Notes: a model not told the origin generated them from the letters alone. A DNA stretch of 64,000 nt from IMGVR_UViG_3300009011_000002:1-64000, one strand, 5' to 3'; shown: positions 54,506 to 59,578, counted from the stretch's first letter. A program made the numbers and translations.

Positions 54506-55522
54506 TTACACGAAGCTCAGGCCGTTGCCGTCCAGCTTGGCGCCGCCGCTGAGGTCCTTCTGTGGAACGTAGGTTTTCTTGGTTTCCGCTTTCAGCGCGT
54601 CCAGTTGTTCCATCTGCGCTTCCAGCTCTTTGACCGCTTCGCCGTGGTCGAGCAGCATGTGCAGCTCTTTCACGTTGCCGGGGCGGTTGTTCTGGTCAGC
54701 AAACACACCGGTGGTGCGCACTGCCACGCCCTTGAAGCGAGGGATCACGTCGTCGCTGCTGGTGAACAGCGAAGCCACCGCGATTGGCAGACGACCTTCG
54801 AAACCGTCGCCTTCTTCGAAGATGCGCTGGTCCAGGAAGCTGATGCGGCTGAGCGCTGGCGGGATCTGCTGGTAGCGGGAGTACTCGAGGAAGTTCTTGA
54901 TGTCCTGGTAGTCCATCTCGCCGTTGGACTCCGTCAGGAACAGGCTCAGCATGTCGCAACGATCAGCGACGCGCTTGTTGGTTTCGCCGCGCTTCTCGTT
55001 CTCGGTGTTCCAGAACTCGAGGTACGGGATCGGCATGTTCAGCAGTTCAGGTCGCACTTGGTTCGAGAACCAGGTCAAGGTGTTCACGCCGTTGGCGAAT
55101 TCAACCTGGGAGGTTTGGTCACCGATGAACACACCCACCGCTGGCAGGCCTTTGTTCTTCAGGTAGCGGAAGGTCAGCAGTGCCAGCAGCGAACCAGTAC
55201 CGCCGGTCAGGTTGCAGACCACGATGTTGAACACGCCGGGTTTGTGCTTGGCCAGGGCCGAGTCGACGAACGGCTGCGCAGCTTCGTAGTTGGTGCTTTG
55301 GATCTTGCCCGAGCCTTTGGCGGCTTGGTTCGGATCATCCGGCAGGGAGATGCGCTCGATCGGGAAATCCGATACCGGGATGTTGGCTTCCGAAGCATCG
55401 AGGCCGACGAAGGTGGCCTTCTTGTTGCCGAAGGCTTTGGCGGTTTGCTTGATGAGGTCGCCGATGTTGATGCCAGTACCGCCGCAGAGGTAGTAGGTCA
55501 GTTCCGATTTTGGTGCGGACAT
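54506..55522 (-). CDS. phuZ: PhuZ phage tubulin
   Basis: N-terminal CGGTGINIG, GSG, tubulin signature TGGTGS, MDYQD T7-like loop, extended C-terminal tail. Confidence 0.9.
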   Translation of the reverse strand: MSAPKSELTYYLCGGTGINIGDLIKQTAKAFGNKKATFVGLDASEANIPVSDFPIERISLPDDPNQAAKGSGKIQSTNYEAAQPFVDSALAKHKPGVFNIVVCNLTGGTGSLLALLTFRYLKNKGLPAVGVFIGDQTSQVEFANGVNTLTWFSNQVRPELLNMPIPYLEFWNTENEKRGETNKRVADRCDMLSLFLTESNGEMDYQDIKNFLEYSRYQQIPPALSRISFLDQRIFEEGDGFEGRLPIAVASLFTSSDDVIPRFKGVAVRTTGVFADQNNRPGNVKELHMLLDHGEAVKELEAQMEQLDALKAETKKTYVPQKDLSGGAKLDGNGLSFV

Positions 55523-55578
55523 TGTGAAGTCTCTCTTCAAGTTACCGTTGGAAAAAGATCATTGTGATCTCTACCGAA

Positions 55579-55596
55579 ATGATGTAGGTCTGAAAT
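55579..55596 (-). promoter_or_regulatory. early-type promoter ATTTCAGACCTACATCAT
   Basis: copy of the conserved motif upstream of phuZ. Confidence 0.7.
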
Positions 55597-55644
55597 ATTC
55601 TTTCCCGTTGCCAAACCTACATTTGCTGCAATTCGTACAGGCCT

Positions 55645-55800
55645 AAAAATAACCTCCCACCGCCCCAGCGGGGAACTGCCTAGCGGCAGGAGGGTTCCCA
55701 TCTAAGAGAACGAAGAGCCTGATAAAGGATACCCGTCTTGCTGGAGAACCTAACCAAAAGCCAACCAGCCGTACACGAGTATAAGATATGGTCAGCCAAG
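55645..55800 (-). ncRNA. candidate small structured RNA ending in an intrinsic terminator
   Basis: non-coding, between two terminators; stem 55653-55693 followed by TTATTTTT. Confidence 0.35.
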
Positions 55801-55804
55801 TAAC

Positions 55805-56115
55805 AAAAAAATAAAGTTAGTACCTCACCAACTCCTGGCCCGAGACGGGGTTGGCCAGGAGAGGTGAGGGGGCAGGGCACAGCAATGGCACAGCAACAGC
55901 AAGGGAGGCACAGCAATGGAACTATCACACGGGGCACAGCAGGGTGGAACGGATTCAGTGGGGTTTTTCTGTAGCCTGCCGATGAACGCAGACCTAACCG
56001 GCTTTACGGGACACTCGCCGGTTATTGCGGTAGGTTTATCACCCCCAACCTTGCCACGAACCTTCAGCCACTATCTCAGAGCAAACTTCATGAGTTCACA
56101 TAGGATAACAACAAC
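55805..56115 (-). ncRNA. candidate structured RNA / long 3' UTR with UGCUGUGCC repeats
   Basis: TAACCGGC/GCCGGTTA hairpin, four 9-mer repeats, long hairpin 55823-55869 plus U-run. Confidence 0.45.
55876..55941. repeat. four direct repeats of GGCACAGCA(A)
   Basis: copies at 55876, 55887, 55907, 55933 and a partial CAGCAA at 55897. Confidence 0.85.
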
Positions 56116-56748
56116 TCAGTGGATCGTTGCAGGCGCTTCTGCCACTTCAGGGGTATGAGGGGTAGGGGCAACTTCTGCGTCGGTCCGTTGAGCCGGTGGA
56201 GCTGACGGTTGTACGGTTTCCAGTGCCGGTGGGCGCTTGCTCAGCACTGCCGGAACCGGAGGAACTTCAAAGATCTGCAGGTTACCGCCGCAACCTACGT
56301 CGAGCTTGCACGCTGACTTGACACCCAGGCGCGCACCTTTGCCAATGGCCATGACACCCAGGGCAAAGTCAGTACCCGAACCAATCGCCACCGGTGGCAG
56401 CATCGGCAGGAGCTCATGGCGGTCCCGGTTGCGTTCTTTGGTCTTCACGACCTTCCACGTCCAGAGCTCGCCCTTCTCGTTGATCACCAGCGCGTGGAAC
56501 GCGATGTTGTCCTGATCTTCGAAACGGGTCTTGTGGGAGATACCCTCCTGGAGTTTCTCTTTGACGTAGTCAATTGCCAAGGCATCCCCAGCCAAGCCGA
56601 AGGCGATTACCTTGACGCCGTTGATTTCCCAGTACTGGTCATCCTCCGGGGTGTAAATCTTCCGGAAGGGGCTCAGGCATACGGTGTCACCCAAAGTCAT
56701 TTGGGAATCGCTGACAAGTTCTTTGCCGTCGAATGCGATGATGGTCAT
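56116..56748 (-). CDS. HslV/proteasome beta-subunit-like Ntn hydrolase
   Basis: Thr at position 2 (MTIIA), SDSQMT, RKI, GLAGD, AIGSG, D..CGG; Pro/Ala-rich tail; GGAG RBS. Confidence 0.8.
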   Translation of the reverse strand: MTIIAFDGKELVSDSQMTLGDTVCLSPFRKIYTPEDDQYWEINGVKVIAFGLAGDALAIDYVKEKLQEGISHKTRFEDQDNIAFHALVINEKGELWTWKVVKTKERNRDRHELLPMLPPVAIGSGTDFALGVMAIGKGARLGVKSACKLDVGCGGNLQIFEVPPVPAVLSKRPPALETVQPSAPPAQRTDAEVAPTPHTPEVAEAPATIH

Positions 56749-56823
56749 GTGTATACAATACTCCGTGACTTGGTGTTTCGGTTTGGTTAGGTTCGTGTAA
56801 TATTCTTTTTGAGTTACAAATCA

Positions 56824-56841
56824 GTGATGTAGGTTTGAAAT
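56824..56841 (-). promoter_or_regulatory. early-type promoter ATTTCAAACCTACATCAC
   Basis: copy of the conserved motif upstream of the HslV-like gene. Confidence 0.7.
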
Positions 56842-57021
56842 CCTCCCGTCCCCTTCTGTTTACCTCGCGTGCGCGTTTAAGTTAATATATCTTTTTAGAT
56901 ATTTAAGTAAATTAAGATAAATCTTAAAAGCAAATTAGGATACTACTACTACGTAGTAGGTTCTTTAGCGCACGGAGCGCGTCCGCGCACGTGCACGCGG
57001 AATAGAGAAGGGAAAGGATTT
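56838..57021. other. origin-like element: AT-rich core flanked by imperfect inverted repeats
   Basis: arms share AAATCCT, CCCTTCT and CGCGTGC blocks; core 56876-56937 is about 85-90% AT. Confidence 0.45.
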
Positions 57022-57276
57022 TTCTGACTGAGTAAATTGGGAAATAAGAATTTTTAACACTCTGAATTTTCCGAAGGAATTGTCTAACGACAAATCTTCA
57101 AAACCCCCGCCAGGAAAAATCTTCTATCCCCGCCCCGCCGAGGAAATCGATTATAACACCCCGACCAGCGTCGTAGACAACGAACAAACCATAAACCCAC
57201 CCAACCCTACCGGGTTGAGCAGATCGTTGATTTAACGCGATTCTAGAACGTTTTAGATTTTGGGATAAAAACCGTC

Positions 57277-57292
57277 AAAAGGGATGCTATAG
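57277..57292 (+). promoter_or_regulatory. candidate late promoter (AGGGATGCTATAG)
   Basis: shares AGGGATGCTAT with 1789-1805. Confidence 0.35.
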
Positions 57293-57347
57293 ACCAACTT
57301 AGTAGAACGGGGATAATGGTGTTCCTGTAGCAGAATAGGGGTTGAAC

Positions 57348-58196
57348 ATGAACTGTGTTGATTACGCCATCAACCGGATTCTGAACGGTTCAGATATCGA
57401 CCAGTACCTTCTGGAACTGGCGTTCAAGAATCCAAACGCAAACTACGCGGGTAACTGGTTTAACCTGGTCAACCAGACCACCGTTGAGCAGGGCATCCGC
57501 GAGAAAGTCATCCACCGCCTGGTACTCCCGGCCTGTAACGTGAGTGGTGGTAAAACCGAGTTCCTGGACTTGTCTGGAGCCACCACCACTGACCTCGGTA
57601 ACGGGTGTATGGAGGTCAACGTACCAGACGTCTCCACCGGAGGTCGGAAGATCATCTCGGTGACGGAAGTGTATCTGGGTGCCATGACTTCGGCCGTCGG
57701 TCAGCTGGGTATGGCGGTCAGTGAGAACACCATGTGTGGGAGCGGTGCTGGTAACGACATGCTCCAGGGTTTGATCGATGGGTTGTCCCCTCAGCGGAAC
57801 TTCCCGTTGACGTTTACCAACTTGCACATGAAGGGTAACAACTGCTTCGTGATCTTTGGTATCCCGAACGGGAACATTTCCCTGTCGGCCAAAGCGGTCA
57901 TGGAGTACGACTCCGGCATGAGCAGCATTTCGCCACGTCACTACGAATACTTTGCCAAACTGGTAGAGCACGCAGTGAAGGCGTATATCTACCGGACTTG
58001 CAAACGCCCAACCAACGAAGCCATCATGCGTTCCGGTGTGAGCCTGAGTGACATCAAGGACGACATTGCGGAATACCGTGATGCGTGGACCAATTACGAG
58101 GAATACCTCAACGACACCTGGCGCCGTTGCATGGCGTGGAGTGACCGTCAGTTGGTGGTGGATACTGTCAACGCGGCTGTTCCTCGTCGCATGTAA
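57348..58196 (+). CDS. conserved phiKZ-like protein, possibly virion-associated
   Basis: 282 aa from ATG 57348 with AGGGG RBS. Confidence 0.65.
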   Translation: MNCVDYAINRILNGSDIDQYLLELAFKNPNANYAGNWFNLVNQTTVEQGIREKVIHRLVLPACNVSGGKTEFLDLSGATTTDLGNGCMEVNVPDVSTGGRKIISVTEVYLGAMTSAVGQLGMAVSENTMCGSGAGNDMLQGLIDGLSPQRNFPLTFTNLHMKGNNCFVIFGIPNGNISLSAKAVMEYDSGMSSISPRHYEYFAKLVEHAVKAYIYRTCKRPTNEAIMRSGVSLSDIKDDIAEYRDAWTNYEEYLNDTWRRCMAWSDRQLVVDTVNAAVPRRM

Positions 58197-58207
58197 CCGG
58201 AGTTCCC

Positions 58208-59578
58208 ATGACAGCCTTTTTCGATCCATTTGAATCAGAGTTCTCGTTGTTTGAAGGCTTGGAAGATCACGGTCCCGGTTGCATCAAGGGTATGCGTGAG
58301 CTTTTCGAAGCCATGGGTGGTATGGAAGCCCTGTTGACGGATGTCAACTTCGAAAGCAACGGTGCGATCCTCCAAGTCTGTGAACGGTTTGGTACCTACC
58401 TGGAGATTACTCCAAAGTGGGCCTTGACCTTGCAGAAGTACGTGTATGCGTTCATCACACGTAAGACCGGTCTGGTCGATTACATGGAGTTCTTCGGTAG
58501 CCCTTACCTCGGACTCCACAAGATCACCTTCACCACCGCTGACCGTAACCAGTGGTTCACGGACATCTTCGACGTGGACGAGGAGGAACTCAAAGAGAAC
58601 CTCCACAACTGCAAAGCGATCAACAAGGATTGGTCGGTGGTCGGCGATGTGTTCAACTTGACGGTTCCGTACCTGCTGTACCGGATCCACAAGTCAACAC
58701 TGGATGCCAAAACCAAGCACCAGGCCATGGTCGACGTGGTGAGCATGTATCACTACAAGTGCTTGACCTCGATCATCCACAACGACTACCCGTTCCAGGC
58801 GCGCCGTGAAGTGGCGATTGAGACCTACAACCGACTGAGTCTGAAGTATGACATCCGCCGGTACGGTTCGTGGAAGAAGCTGATCCAAGCACGGGCTGAG
58901 TACATCCTCGATCCCAAGACGGGGATTCACTACGAAGCCTTCACCAAAATGCAAGACGACAAGAAGATCGTCTACATGGTCGGTGACATCCAGAACCGGT
59001 TGCGTCGTGCGATCAACGACATCAACAAAGTGTTCCACGATGTGAAGAACAAGACGAACATCGTGAAGCTGGACAACGCGAAGGTGAACCTCGGGGACGA
59101 ATTGAGTCTGAAGTCCGTCTCCAAGGAAATCACCCAGTACGCCATGTACCTCGAACGTATCCTGACCGAGCAAACCTCGTTCTACAAAGACGAGTTGGTC
59201 GGGTACGCCAACGAAGCCCTGGAAGGCTCTCCTCGAGATAAACTGGCATTCGTGGTGCAGCGCTTCCCGGCGTTGTACAACAACCCGAAGAAGCCCAAGT
59301 ACAAGGAATTCGCAGATGCGGTCTTGACCCACCTGTTCGAATACCTGCACGCCAACAGCATCCAAAAGACTAACGTCTACGATGTGTTGAACAAGATGCG
59401 GGGTGCGTATGGGGCTCCTCGTAGCAAGAACGACACCGTCAAGGTTATCCGTACTGTGGGGGATGAGTTGGTCAAAGAACTGACCGGCATTAAAACTCCA
59501 CAGAAGGTCCAATTGATTAGGACAGCGCTGAGTTTGTATTTCGTGCTACGGATCCTGTCCAAGGACTATTACGAATAA
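58208..59578 (+). CDS. conserved phiKZ-like virion protein
   Basis: 456 aa, GGAG RBS, N-terminal GLE/GME candidate processing sites. Confidence 0.65.
   Translation: MTAFFDPFESEFSLFEGLEDHGPGCIKGMRELFEAMGGMEALLTDVNFESNGAILQVCERFGTYLEITPKWALTLQKYVYAFITRKTGLVDYMEFFGSPYLGLHKITFTTADRNQWFTDIFDVDEEELKENLHNCKAINKDWSVVGDVFNLTVPYLLYRIHKSTLDAKTKHQAMVDVVSMYHYKCLTSIIHNDYPFQARREVAIETYNRLSLKYDIRRYGSWKKLIQARAEYILDPKTGIHYEAFTKMQDDKKIVYMVGDIQNRLRRAINDINKVFHDVKNKTNIVKLDNAKVNLGDELSLKSVSKEITQYAMYLERILTEQTSFYKDELVGYANEALEGSPRDKLAFVVQRFPALYNNPKKPKYKEFADAVLTHLFEYLHANSIQKTNVYDVLNKMRGAYGAPRSKNDTVKVIRTVGDELVKELTGIKTPQKVQLIRTALSLYFVLRILSKDYYE

What the first reader, a model, noticed from the sequence alone, without database searches (positions are those of the whole stretch)
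55805..56115. Structured non-coding RNA with a tandem UGCUGUGCC array, a possible sponge or decoy
Seen: 310 nt after the HslV-like stop with no credible ORF; a nested stem region (GGGG...CCCC enclosing UAACCGGC/GCCGGUUA); four copies of (U)UGCUGUGCC within 66 nt (two extend to CCAUUGCUGUGCC); then a ~20-bp hairpin and U-run. Known: multivalent short-motif RNAs (CsrB/RsmZ, CrcZ, phage ToxI mimics) titrate proteins or RNAs. The motif matches none I recognise. Inference: an early phage RNA decoy for a host RNA-binding or defence protein or sRNA, co-expressed with the Ntn protease as an uncharacterised host-takeover module.
Basis: partly seen in the sequence, partly recalled or inferred. Interest (0 to 1): 0.65.

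Follow-up and report, generated by a model that had tools for sequence, protein, structure and literature searches.

The report
Conserved jumbo-phage RNA with repeat tail
The interval is a real non-coding RNA gene of an uncultivated giant phage, but its conserved part is a pseudoknotted core shared by about twenty related phages, while the eye-catching UGCUGUGCC repeats are a recent add-on found only in this phage's closest kin.

Summary
TGCTGTGCC occurs four times in the 226,773-bp genome, and all four copies lie in 66 nt. The window comes from an EL-like jumbo phage that encodes PhuZ tubulin and split multisubunit RNA polymerase genes.

The interval lies between an HslV-like peptidase gene and phuZ. 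It holds a roughly 295-nt unit made of:
- an invariant TATG;
- a structured core of about 140 nt (P1 to P4, plus a pseudoknot between the GGGG loop and a downstream CCCC);
- a variable tail;
- a strong intrinsic terminator.

A covariance model finds the core at the same position in 20 related phage loci. The pairs covary, including GGGG/CCCC to GGAG/CUCC in the pseudoknot. Rfam has no match. A second conserved small unit (B) follows before the phuZ promoter.

The repeat array is not part of the conserved family. It is present only in this phage and its nearest relatives, where two of the four copies differ. Every other member lacks it. The array is pyrimidine-rich and predicted to be unstructured. 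It probably arose by local duplication of a single ancestral motif.

Sponge or decoy function is neither supported nor excluded. I found no phage mRNA target and no RNA-seq data. Best reading: a new structured phage sRNA family with a lineage-specific expansion tail.

The parts
56116..56748 (-). HslV-like (Ntn) peptidase gene, 210 aa, upstream neighbour
   Evidence: PHROG 1040 'peptidase HslV family', E 1.4e-27. tblastn hits to annotated HslV-family genes of phage EL and others. No Pfam, PADLOC or PDB sequence hit.
56099..56102 (-). Invariant TATG at the 5' edge of the RNA unit; putative phiKZ-type late promoter core with G (56099) as +1
   Evidence: TATG is present at the 5' edge of the unit in nearly all family members. 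In phiKZ, TATG with G as +1 is necessary for nvRNAP late transcription (PMC4666361). The phage encodes split beta and beta' RNAP genes. The start site itself is inferred, not shown.
55960..56097 (-). Conserved structured core: P1 56097-56083; P2 56057-56027 with loop GGGGG 56046-42; P3 56024-55995 with conserved loop UCCCGUAA; P4 55993-55974; A-run 55968-64; pseudoknot 3' strand CCCC 55963-60
   Evidence: Covariance model R1 hits window 55934-56104 at 110 bits and 19 other loci. It is single-copy in the genome. 87.8% of cells are paired against 75.5% in shuffles, and 19 of 34 pairs change on both sides. Single-sequence folds give the same hairpins in nearly all of the 17 distinct sequences.
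55876..55941 (-). Repeat array: four UGCUGUGCC copies plus a partial UGCUGU, inside a pyrimidine-rich tail (55871-55944; 4 A in 74 nt)
   Evidence: These are the only four copies in the genome. TRF gives period 11. The tail alone folds no better than shuffles (z -0.07). It is present only in the window, L198, L005/L006 and runs X3-X5. It is absent in the other family members.
55805..55869 (-). Intrinsic terminator of unit A: hairpin 55869-55823 and T-run 55815-55805
   Evidence: -31.7 kcal/mol, z -5.5. Every family member has a strong hairpin plus U-run at this place.
55640..55790 (-). Unit B, a second conserved small non-coding unit: TATCTTATAC motif 55788-55779, hairpin 55769-55740 with conserved loop UUGGUUAGGUU, terminator hairpin 55694-55653 and U-run
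   Evidence: Alignments. The stem covaries: GCUGG/CCAGC in the window, CGAGAG/CUCUCG in L010, CAUCCGG/CCGGAUG in L020. The terminator was found by scan. A sigma70-like TTGTTA-17-TATACT lies at 55806-55778.
55580..55595 (-). Phage promoter-like motif TTTCAGACCTACATCA in front of phuZ
   Evidence: About a dozen copies of this motif lie in front of minus-strand genes across the genome, including HslV (56840-56825). AACCTA/ACCTAT words are enriched upstream of genes. The matching site in EL is annotated as a putative phage promoter.
54506..55522 (-). phuZ (phage tubulin), downstream neighbour
   Evidence: PHROG 4733 tubulin PhuZ, E 2e-71. Pfam TubZ_C_2. 41-43% identity to PhuZ of phages EL, RisingSun and FishSpeaker.

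Best explanation
The interval is most of a roughly 295-nt non-coding transcription unit, 'unit A' (window 56099 to 55805, minus strand). It lies between the HslV-like gene and phuZ in an uncultivated EL-like jumbo phage that carries phiKZ-type split RNA polymerase genes.

**Shown**
- Its first ~140 nt form a conserved fold: a 5' hairpin P1, then P2, whose G-rich loop pairs with a C-run about 80 nt downstream. That pseudoknot encloses hairpins P3 and P4.
- This core defines an RNA family that is not in Rfam. It sits at the same position in at least 20 related phage contigs.
- The unit ends in a strong intrinsic terminator.
- The UGCUGUGCC array lies in the family's variable linker between core and terminator. 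It is an insertion of about 65 nt, it is predicted to be unstructured, and it is restricted to this phage's species-level lineage.

**Inferred**
- The array was built by successive local duplications of a single ancestral CUGCUGUG-like motif. L010 still has one such motif just before its terminator.
- The RNA is made as its own small transcript from the invariant TATG (phiKZ late-promoter type, G = +1), by read-through from the HslV promoter, or by both.
- It acts in trans as a stably folded RNA that is recognised through its tertiary structure by a protein or small ligand, not as a simple base-pairing sRNA.
- The repeat tail is an expansion segment. At most it adds extra single-stranded sites, and the family's function does not require it.
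For: - **Gene context:**
- **Same layout in relatives:** phage EL and related contigs have the HslV, ~500-600 nt gap, phuZ arrangement.
- **Alignments:** they show a conserved core, a variable tail and a terminator.
- **Model hits:** R1 hits 20 loci at E 1e-6 to 1e-61, all 350-580 nt upstream of phuZ.
- **Single-sequence folds:** they reproduce P2, P3 and P4 in nearly all of the 17 distinct sequences. The loop and tail are complementary in three forms: GGGG/CCCC, GGAG/CUCC and GGUGAU/AUCACC.
- **Pair counts:** 87.8% of cells paired, against 75.5% in shuffles and 30-46% in slid controls. 19 of 34 pairs show changes on both sides. 0 of 500 shuffles reach the observed values. Pseudoknot pair 103-246 is A-U in 9 sequences and G-C in 7.
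- **Strand:** many G-U pairs in the helices place the structure on the minus-strand RNA only.
- **Rfam:** no hit even at E up to 10.
- **Terminator:** z = -5.5.
- **Array is lineage-specific:**
- **Tail is unstructured:** z = -0.07.
- **TATG rule:** from PMC4666361. The RNAP genes are present.
- **Precedent:** short units with a start site followed closely by a terminator are known in phages 201phi2-1 and phiKZ (PMC11512511).
Against: - There are no expression data. No public RNA run holds this phage.
- The TATG promoter is an analogy. In phiKZ, TATG is necessary but not sufficient, and here TATG is only weakly enriched upstream of genes once T-ATG start codons are set aside.
- The pair counts were made on an alignment fitted to a model that contained part of the structure, and the sequences are related. 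The shuffle test therefore overstates significance.
- The window and L005 differ as little in the tail (92% identity) as in the core (94%) or phuZ (94%). Neutral decay of the array is therefore not demonstrated, and some constraint on it cannot be excluded.
- The function of the core is unknown.
Confidence: 0.6

Rival explanations
1. The RNA is a multivalent sponge or decoy, and the four UGCUGUGCC units titrate a host RNA-binding protein, defence protein or sRNA during takeover.
For: - There are four identical 9-mers in 66 nt and none elsewhere in the genome.
- The tail is predicted single-stranded and 36-60% unpaired when the core is enforced.
- Copies 2 and 4 are identical in all haplotypes seen.
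- The tail is no more diverged than phuZ between the window and L005.
Against: - The array is absent from all other members of the RNA family.
- Copies 1 and 3 are mutated in the haplotypes from three other studies.
- The motif has no GGA and no A-rich CA motif, and it does not have 36-nt units.
- No phage translation-start target scores better than with shuffled queries (-24.9 against a mean best of -25.0).
- The host is unknown, so no host target could be tested.
Confidence: 0.12
2. Units A and B are cis-acting leaders, riboswitch- or attenuator-like. The folded core would decide whether transcription coming from the HslV gene stops at the terminators or reads through into phuZ.
For: - The layout is a structured domain followed directly by an intrinsic terminator, twice in tandem, upstream of phuZ and on the same strand.
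- There is no terminator between the HslV stop and unit A.
- The pseudoknot topology is common in aptamers (general knowledge).
Against: - phuZ has its own conserved promoter-like motif downstream of both terminators.
- The distance from pseudoknot to terminator varies from about 8 to 92 nt, and I found no conserved alternative (antiterminator) pairing.
- No known riboswitch class matched.
Confidence: 0.15
3. Unit A is simply the 3' UTR of the HslV-like mRNA. The folded domain plus terminator would stabilise or localise that mRNA, and there would be no independent RNA.
For: - Unit A starts 13 nt after the stop codon with no intervening terminator.
- In most family members an HslV-like gene directly precedes it.
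Against: - In L013/L017 the gene directly upstream of unit A is a 99-aa ORF of unknown family. For L022 and L037 the script found no HslV-like ORF directly upstream.
- The invariant TATG and a hairpin placed right after it fit a primary 5' end.
- The core is better conserved than the HslV coding sequence, 94% against 82% between the window and L005.
Confidence: 0.1
4. The repeats act at the DNA level. They could be iteron-like protein-binding sites, such as a tubC-like centromere for the TubZ-family PhuZ, or a sigma54-like GG-N10-GC site on the plus strand.
For: - These are direct repeats with an 11-bp period about 350-400 bp upstream of a TubZ-family gene.
- On the plus strand, GGCAC-N6-GGCA gives the GG-N10-GC spacing of sigma54 promoters (read from the sequence).
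Against: - The repeats are absent from relatives that keep phuZ.
- No TubR-like gene was seen nearby.
- The phage has its own RNA polymerases.
- The GG-N10-GC match follows automatically from an 11-bp period.
Confidence: 0.03

Closest known systems
Small RNAs of giant Pseudomonas phages found by ONT-cappable-seq (201phi2-1 sRNA005 and the phiKZ sRNA upstream of gp182; PMC11512511)
   Same: - It is a short non-coding unit in a phiKZ-like jumbo phage, bounded by a start signal and a nearby intrinsic terminator.
- It is conserved by position among related phages.
- Its function is unknown.
   Different: - The locus differs: between HslV and phuZ, not upstream of a tail gene.
- Here a multi-helix pseudoknotted fold is supported by covariation.
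- No transcript data exist here.
- Sequence relatedness to those sRNAs was not tested.
Protein-sponge RNAs CsrB/RsmY/RsmZ and CrcZ/CrcY
   Same: Several copies of one short motif lie within a small non-coding RNA that ends in a terminator.
   Different: - The motif is UGCUGUGCC, not GGA in hairpin loops or A-rich CA motifs.
- The copies lie in an unstructured pyrimidine-rich tract.
- Homologues do not keep the multivalency.
ToxI-type antitoxin RNA arrays and phage pseudo-ToxI
   Same: It is a phage-borne repeat RNA whose repeat number can expand by recombination.
   Different: - Units here are 9-13 nt (periods 11 and 26), not 34-45 nt units that each fold.
- There is no Rfam ToxI match.
- No PADLOC hit was found in the seven neighbouring proteins scanned.
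phi29-family packaging RNA (pRNA); resemblance recalled from memory, a lead only
   Same: It is a phage-encoded structured RNA of 120-170 nt. A loop pairs with a distant complementary 4-6 nt strand that covaries between related phages while the sequence drifts.
   Different: - The phage group is unrelated and there is no sequence or Rfam match.
- Whether the loop pairing here is within one molecule or between molecules is unknown.
- There is no link to packaging genes.
Pseudoknotted riboswitch aptamers followed by terminators
   Same: A conserved pseudoknotted domain lies directly upstream of an intrinsic terminator, on the sense strand upstream of a gene.
   Different: - The linker has variable length and there is no conserved switch helix.
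- The downstream gene has its own promoter.
- No known class matched.

Membership tests
Any Rfam 15 family | Score at or above the family's gathering threshold | tested here: not met
   There were no matches in the whole window at gathering thresholds. At E up to 10 in 55400-56300 only four chance-level hits appeared, at 14-17 bits against cut-offs of 50-91.
CsrB/RsmZ-type sponge | Multiple GGA (ANGGA) motifs, mostly in hairpin loops | tested here: not met
   The array and tail (55871-55944) contain no GGA on the RNA strand, and the repeated motif is UGCUGUGCC.
CsrB/RsmZ-type sponge | Multivalency kept among homologues | tested here: not met
   The array is absent from the other family members. 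Two of the four copies are altered in the nearest relatives.
CrcZ/CrcY-type sponge | Several A-rich (AANAANAA) motifs | tested here: not met
   The tail has 4 A in 74 nt.
ToxI-type (type III) antitoxin array | Tandem units of about 34-45 nt next to an endoribonuclease toxin gene | tested here: not met
   The periods are 11 and about 26 nt (sequence). There is no Rfam hit and no PADLOC hit in the seven neighbours scanned.
Jumbo-phage small RNA unit (start site followed closely by terminator) | Intrinsic terminator within about 300 nt of the start signal | tested here: met
   From TATG at 56102-56099 to the T-run at 55815-55805 is about 295 nt. The hairpin has z = -5.5.
Jumbo-phage small RNA unit (start site followed closely by terminator) | Mapped transcription start and accumulation of the short RNA | not testable with these tools
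   No RNA run holds this phage.
New 'HslV-phuZ intergenic pseudoknot RNA' family (defined here) | P2 hairpin whose G-rich loop pairs with a C-rich strand after P3 and P4, preceded by an A-run | tested here: met
   The window scores 110 bits with model R1. The loop GGGGG and the CCCC strand are present. The pairing covaries across the family.
New 'HslV-phuZ intergenic pseudoknot RNA' family (defined here) | Position 350-600 nt upstream of phuZ, followed by unit B | tested here: met
Riboswitch with terminator expression platform | Conserved mutually exclusive pairing linking aptamer and terminator | tested here: inconclusive
   I found no conserved alternative helix, and the linker is 8-92 nt. 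A partial CCACCUGC/GCGGUGG complementarity was seen by eye, only in the L020 group.

The most novel reading that the evidence does not exclude
The conserved core could be a new class of ligand- or protein-binding RNA used by a clade of nucleus-forming jumbo phages. Together with unit B it might form an RNA control module around the HslV-like protease and PhuZ spindle genes. In this lineage it would have gained a multivalent single-stranded tail that titrates a host RNA-binding factor or sRNA.
Probability: 0.1. Interest if true: 0.8.

Novelty: new variant of a known kind. Interest (0 to 1): 0.55.

Why it matters
Jumbo phages that build a nucleus are known to make small RNAs, but almost none has a defined structure or role. 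This locus offers two conserved, tandem, terminator-bounded RNAs. One has a covariation-supported pseudoknot spanning about 80 nt. They lie next to the gene for the PhuZ spindle in a whole clade of uncultivated EL-like phages.

That gives RNA biologists a concrete new family to probe. It also shows that the conspicuous repeat array, which drew attention to the locus, is a young expansion and not the conserved functional element. If the tail does bind something, comparing relatives with and without the array would be a natural experiment.

Tried and rejected
- **Known RNA families and tRNAs:** Rfam at gathering and permissive thresholds, and tRNA/tmRNA search, found nothing.
- **Nucleotide search of phage genomes:** blastn of the locus against 50,697 phage records gave no match.
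- **Close relatives in viral contigs:** a single-protein search found none. Relatives came from the protein word search and from an alignment-based scan.
- **Two motif copies within 30 nt across viral contigs:** this returned more than 117 unrelated hits. They are uninformative and probably chance or coding repeats.
- **Metagenome scan with a 23-nt core word:** it found only an identical copy of this phage.
- **Small-ORF readings:** rejected. The ORFs cross the terminator, and indels in relatives break the frame of the 85-aa ORF. The two largest ORFs match no family. The ATG-TGA start-stop and the 4-6-codon mini-ORFs after TATG are not conserved (read).
- **Phage mRNA targets of the repeats:** none beats shuffled queries, and no exact complement exists in the genome.
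- **Antiterminator pairing:** not conserved.
- **tubC-like centromere and sigma54-like site:** rejected on comparative absence.
- **Type I-F CRISPR-repeat-like hairpin CUGCCGCUAGGCAG in the unit B terminator loop:** broken in the nearest relative, so probably chance.
- **Second covariance model with my corrected structure:**
- **Searches of bacterial genomes for a host counterpart of the RNA:** not possible.
- **Whole genomes of EL, RisingSun and three other PhuZ phages:** no copy of the core at E up to 1. With filters off, only weak syntenic traces appear in L030, L033, L035, L045 and EL.
- **Expression:** no public RNA run holds the sequence.

Full report
**1. What is in the sequence**

The genes around the finding lie on the minus strand. 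An HslV-like peptidase gene occupies 56116-56748 (PHROG 1040, E 1.4e-27). The phage tubulin gene phuZ occupies 54506-55522 (PHROG 4733, E 2e-71; Pfam TubZ_C_2). Between them is a 593-nt gap with no credible ORF.

- GGGGG at 56046-56042 and CCCC at 55963-55960;
- these enclose UAACCGGC (56024-56017) and GCCGGUUA (56002-55995);
- four exact UGCUGUGCC copies between 55941 and 55876, plus a partial copy;
- a 16-pair hairpin at 55869-55823 (-31.7 kcal/mol, z -5.5), followed by a U-run at 55815-55805.

The 9-mer occurs nowhere else on either strand of the 226,773-bp genome. Tandem Repeats Finder sees a period-11 array.

**2. What genome this is**

The window is the first 64 kb of a complete IMG/VR phage record with terminal repeats. 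Its PhuZ is 41-43% identical to PhuZ of Pseudomonas phage EL, Erwinia phage RisingSun and Shewanella phage FishSpeaker. It encodes split beta-like and beta'-like RNA polymerase genes, as phiKZ-type phages do.

DNA of this phage lineage turns up in rhizosphere, soil, groundwater and wastewater metagenomes. No RNA run holds it. Phage EL has the same layout: HslV, about 500 nt with two terminators, then phuZ.

**3. Comparative evidence**

The protein word search on PhuZ, contig look-ups and an alignment-based scan of viral contigs gave about 80 loci that carry the region upstream of phuZ. Alignments show a conserved three-part architecture.

- **Unit A.** It starts with a nearly invariant (C)TATGTGAACTC 13 nt after the HslV stop. 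A conserved core follows, then a variable linker, then a strong terminator.
- **Unit B.** It starts with TAT(C/T)TTATAC. A hairpin with a covarying stem carries a conserved roughly 20-nt loop (UUGGUUAGGUU). A variable middle section and a terminator follow.
- **phuZ promoter and leader.** A promoter-like motif TTTCA(G/A)ACCTA(C/T)AT(C/T)A precedes the phuZ leader. This motif occurs about a dozen times in front of minus-strand genes in this genome, including HslV.

**4. Unit A is a structured RNA family**

A covariance model built from 12 sequences (R1) finds the core in 20 loci. All hits are on the gene strand and 350-580 nt upstream of phuZ, with E from 1e-6 to 1e-61. It finds one copy in this genome.

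Folding each of the 17 distinct sequences alone gives the same hairpins P2, P3 and P4 in nearly every case. In every one the P2 loop is complementary to the strand that follows an A-run after P4. The pairing takes three forms: GGGG/CCCC, GGAG/CUCC (UGGAGU/ACUCCA in L019), and GGUGAU/AUCACC in L011.

I counted my 34-pair structure, including the pseudoknot, on the model alignment:

| Measure | Observed | Control |
|---|---|---|
| Cells paired | 87.8% | 75.5% in shuffles |
| Cells paired, partners slid 1-3 columns | n/a | 30-46% |
| Pairs with changes on both sides | 19 of 34 | n/a |
| Shuffles reaching the observed values | 0 of 500 | n/a |

The pseudoknot pair 103-246 is A-U in nine sequences and G-C in seven. 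Frequent G-U pairs place the fold on the minus-strand RNA.

Two caveats apply. The alignment was fitted to a model that held part of this structure, and the sequences are related. The shuffle figures are therefore not probabilities.

Rfam 15 has no match. More distant PhuZ phages, EL included, give only weak syntenic traces and no copy elsewhere in their genomes. The family therefore belongs to one uncultivated subclade.

**5. Where the repeat array fits**

The array sits in the family's variable linker, between the pseudoknot 3' strand and the terminator. That linker is 8-25 nt in most members and about 50 nt, with an extra hairpin, in L007. It is about 92 nt in the window.

Only the window, an identical second assembly (L198) and the nearest relatives carry the array. 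Those relatives are L005/L006 and contigs in three other studies. In them, copies 1 and 3 each carry a substitution at motif position 7 (G to A and G to U). The partial copy is also altered. Copies 2 and 4 are unchanged.

L010 has a single CUGCUGUGG directly before its terminator. The window's copies share longer flanks: GUUCCA(CCC/U)UGCUGUGCC occurs twice, and UGCUGUGCC(A/C)U occurs in tandem. I therefore infer that the array grew by local duplications of one ancestral motif.

The tail has 4 A in 74 nt. It folds no better than shuffled sequence (z -0.07). With the core enforced it is 36-60% unpaired, so it would be an accessible pyrimidine-rich strand.

Between the window and L005 the identities are as follows:

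| Segment | Identity |
|---|---|
| Tail | 92% |
| Core | 94% |
| phuZ | 94% |
| HslV gene | 82% |

The data therefore show neither decay of the array nor special constraint on it.

No phage translation-start region pairs with the repeats better than with shuffled repeats. The genome holds no exact complement. The host is unknown, so host targets could not be tested.

**6. How it most likely works**

*Shown.* The interval is a conserved, strand-specific, pseudoknotted RNA domain followed by a terminator. It carries a lineage-specific repeat insertion.

*Inferred.* The invariant TATG matches the phiKZ late-promoter core, in which G is +1 and every base is needed for transcription by the non-virion polymerase (PMC4666361). 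The P1 hairpin would then begin at +3, as in many primary sRNAs. Short units with a start site followed closely by a terminator are documented in phiKZ and 201phi2-1 (PMC11512511).

I therefore favour an independent small RNA of about 295 nt here and about 200 nt in relatives. It would act through its folded core on a protein or ligand, with the repeat tail as an expansion segment. Read-through from the HslV promoter is also possible, because no terminator intervenes.

The rivals, with my estimates, are:
- the sponge model (about 0.12);
- a cis-acting attenuator or riboswitch-like leader for phuZ (about 0.15). Against it are phuZ's own promoter, the variable linker and the lack of a conserved switch helix;
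- a plain HslV 3' UTR element (about 0.1);
- DNA-level repeats (about 0.03).

**7. Comparison with known systems**

The RNA works like, and is closest in kind to, the positionally conserved small RNAs reported for giant Pseudomonas phages. It is at a different locus, and here there is structural evidence.

It fails the defining tests for CsrB/RsmZ (no GGA), CrcZ (no A-rich motifs) and ToxI (wrong unit size, and no PADLOC hit in the seven neighbouring proteins scanned). The covarying long-range loop pairing recalls phi29 pRNA, but that is a resemblance from memory, not a test.

**8. Verdict**

The real finding is a new structured RNA family, with a companion unit B, between the HslV-like gene and phuZ in an EL-like jumbo-phage clade.

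Noticed in passing
window 55740-55769 (minus) and 56782-56794 (minus): The conserved loop of unit B (UUUGGUUAGGUUC) is perfectly complementary over 13 nt to the leader of the HslV-like mRNA (GAACCUAACCAAA, about 35-45 nt upstream of the ATG). Duplex energy is -20 kcal/mol, and 0 of 500 shuffled loops do as well. Similar pairing is found in L007 (1 of 500, shifted register) and L015 (4 of 500). It is not significant in L010, L011 or the L020 group. Unit B may be a base-pairing regulator of the protease gene in some lineages.
   Followed up: partly
window 55640-55790 (minus): Unit B is a second conserved non-coding unit with its own start motif (TATCTTATAC, also present in phage EL), a covarying hairpin and a terminator. 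A sigma70-like TTGTTA-17-TATACT overlaps the motif at 55806-55778, so host polymerase could also transcribe it.
   Followed up: partly
window 55611-55622 and 55580-55595 (minus): ATGTAGGTTTGG lies just upstream of the phuZ promoter-like motif and is the inverted repeat of its core (CAGACCTACAT). The arrangement is kept in relatives. It could be a regulator site, a hairpin, or a divergent promoter copy that would give antisense transcripts across units B and A.
   Followed up: no
window 55674-55687 (minus), loop of the unit B terminator: CUGCCGCUAGGCAG resembles the stem-loop of type I-F CRISPR repeats (recalled from memory). It is disrupted in the nearest relative L005, so it is probably chance and not an RNA anti-CRISPR.
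   Followed up: partly
window 56825-56880 (minus) and 56749-57341: A block CGCGCACGCGAGGTAAACAGAA(A/G)GG just upstream of the HslV promoter-like motif is conserved in the window, L005, L007, L010 and L011. The 593-nt gap upstream also holds an AT-rich stretch and GC-rich palindromic sequence. Function unknown.
   Followed up: no
genome-wide, e.g. window 5753, 33567, 38592, 55595, 56840 (minus): About a dozen copies of TTTCA(G/A)ACCTA(C/T)AT(C/T)A lie in front of minus-strand genes. This is probably the main phage promoter class. It resembles the extended early-promoter consensus of phiKZ-type phages. The class assignment is not tested.
   Followed up: partly
window 57390-58229 (minus): A 279-aa ORF lies next to the HslV upstream gap. 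Its counterpart in L005/L011 carries a weak HNH_3 hit, so it may be a homing-endonuclease-like gene. The window copy has no Pfam hit at E 0.01.
   Followed up: no
window vs L005, 56116-56748: The HslV-like coding sequence is only 82% identical between the window and L005, while the flanking RNA core and phuZ are 94% identical. This suggests mosaic exchange or faster evolution of the protease gene.
   Followed up: no
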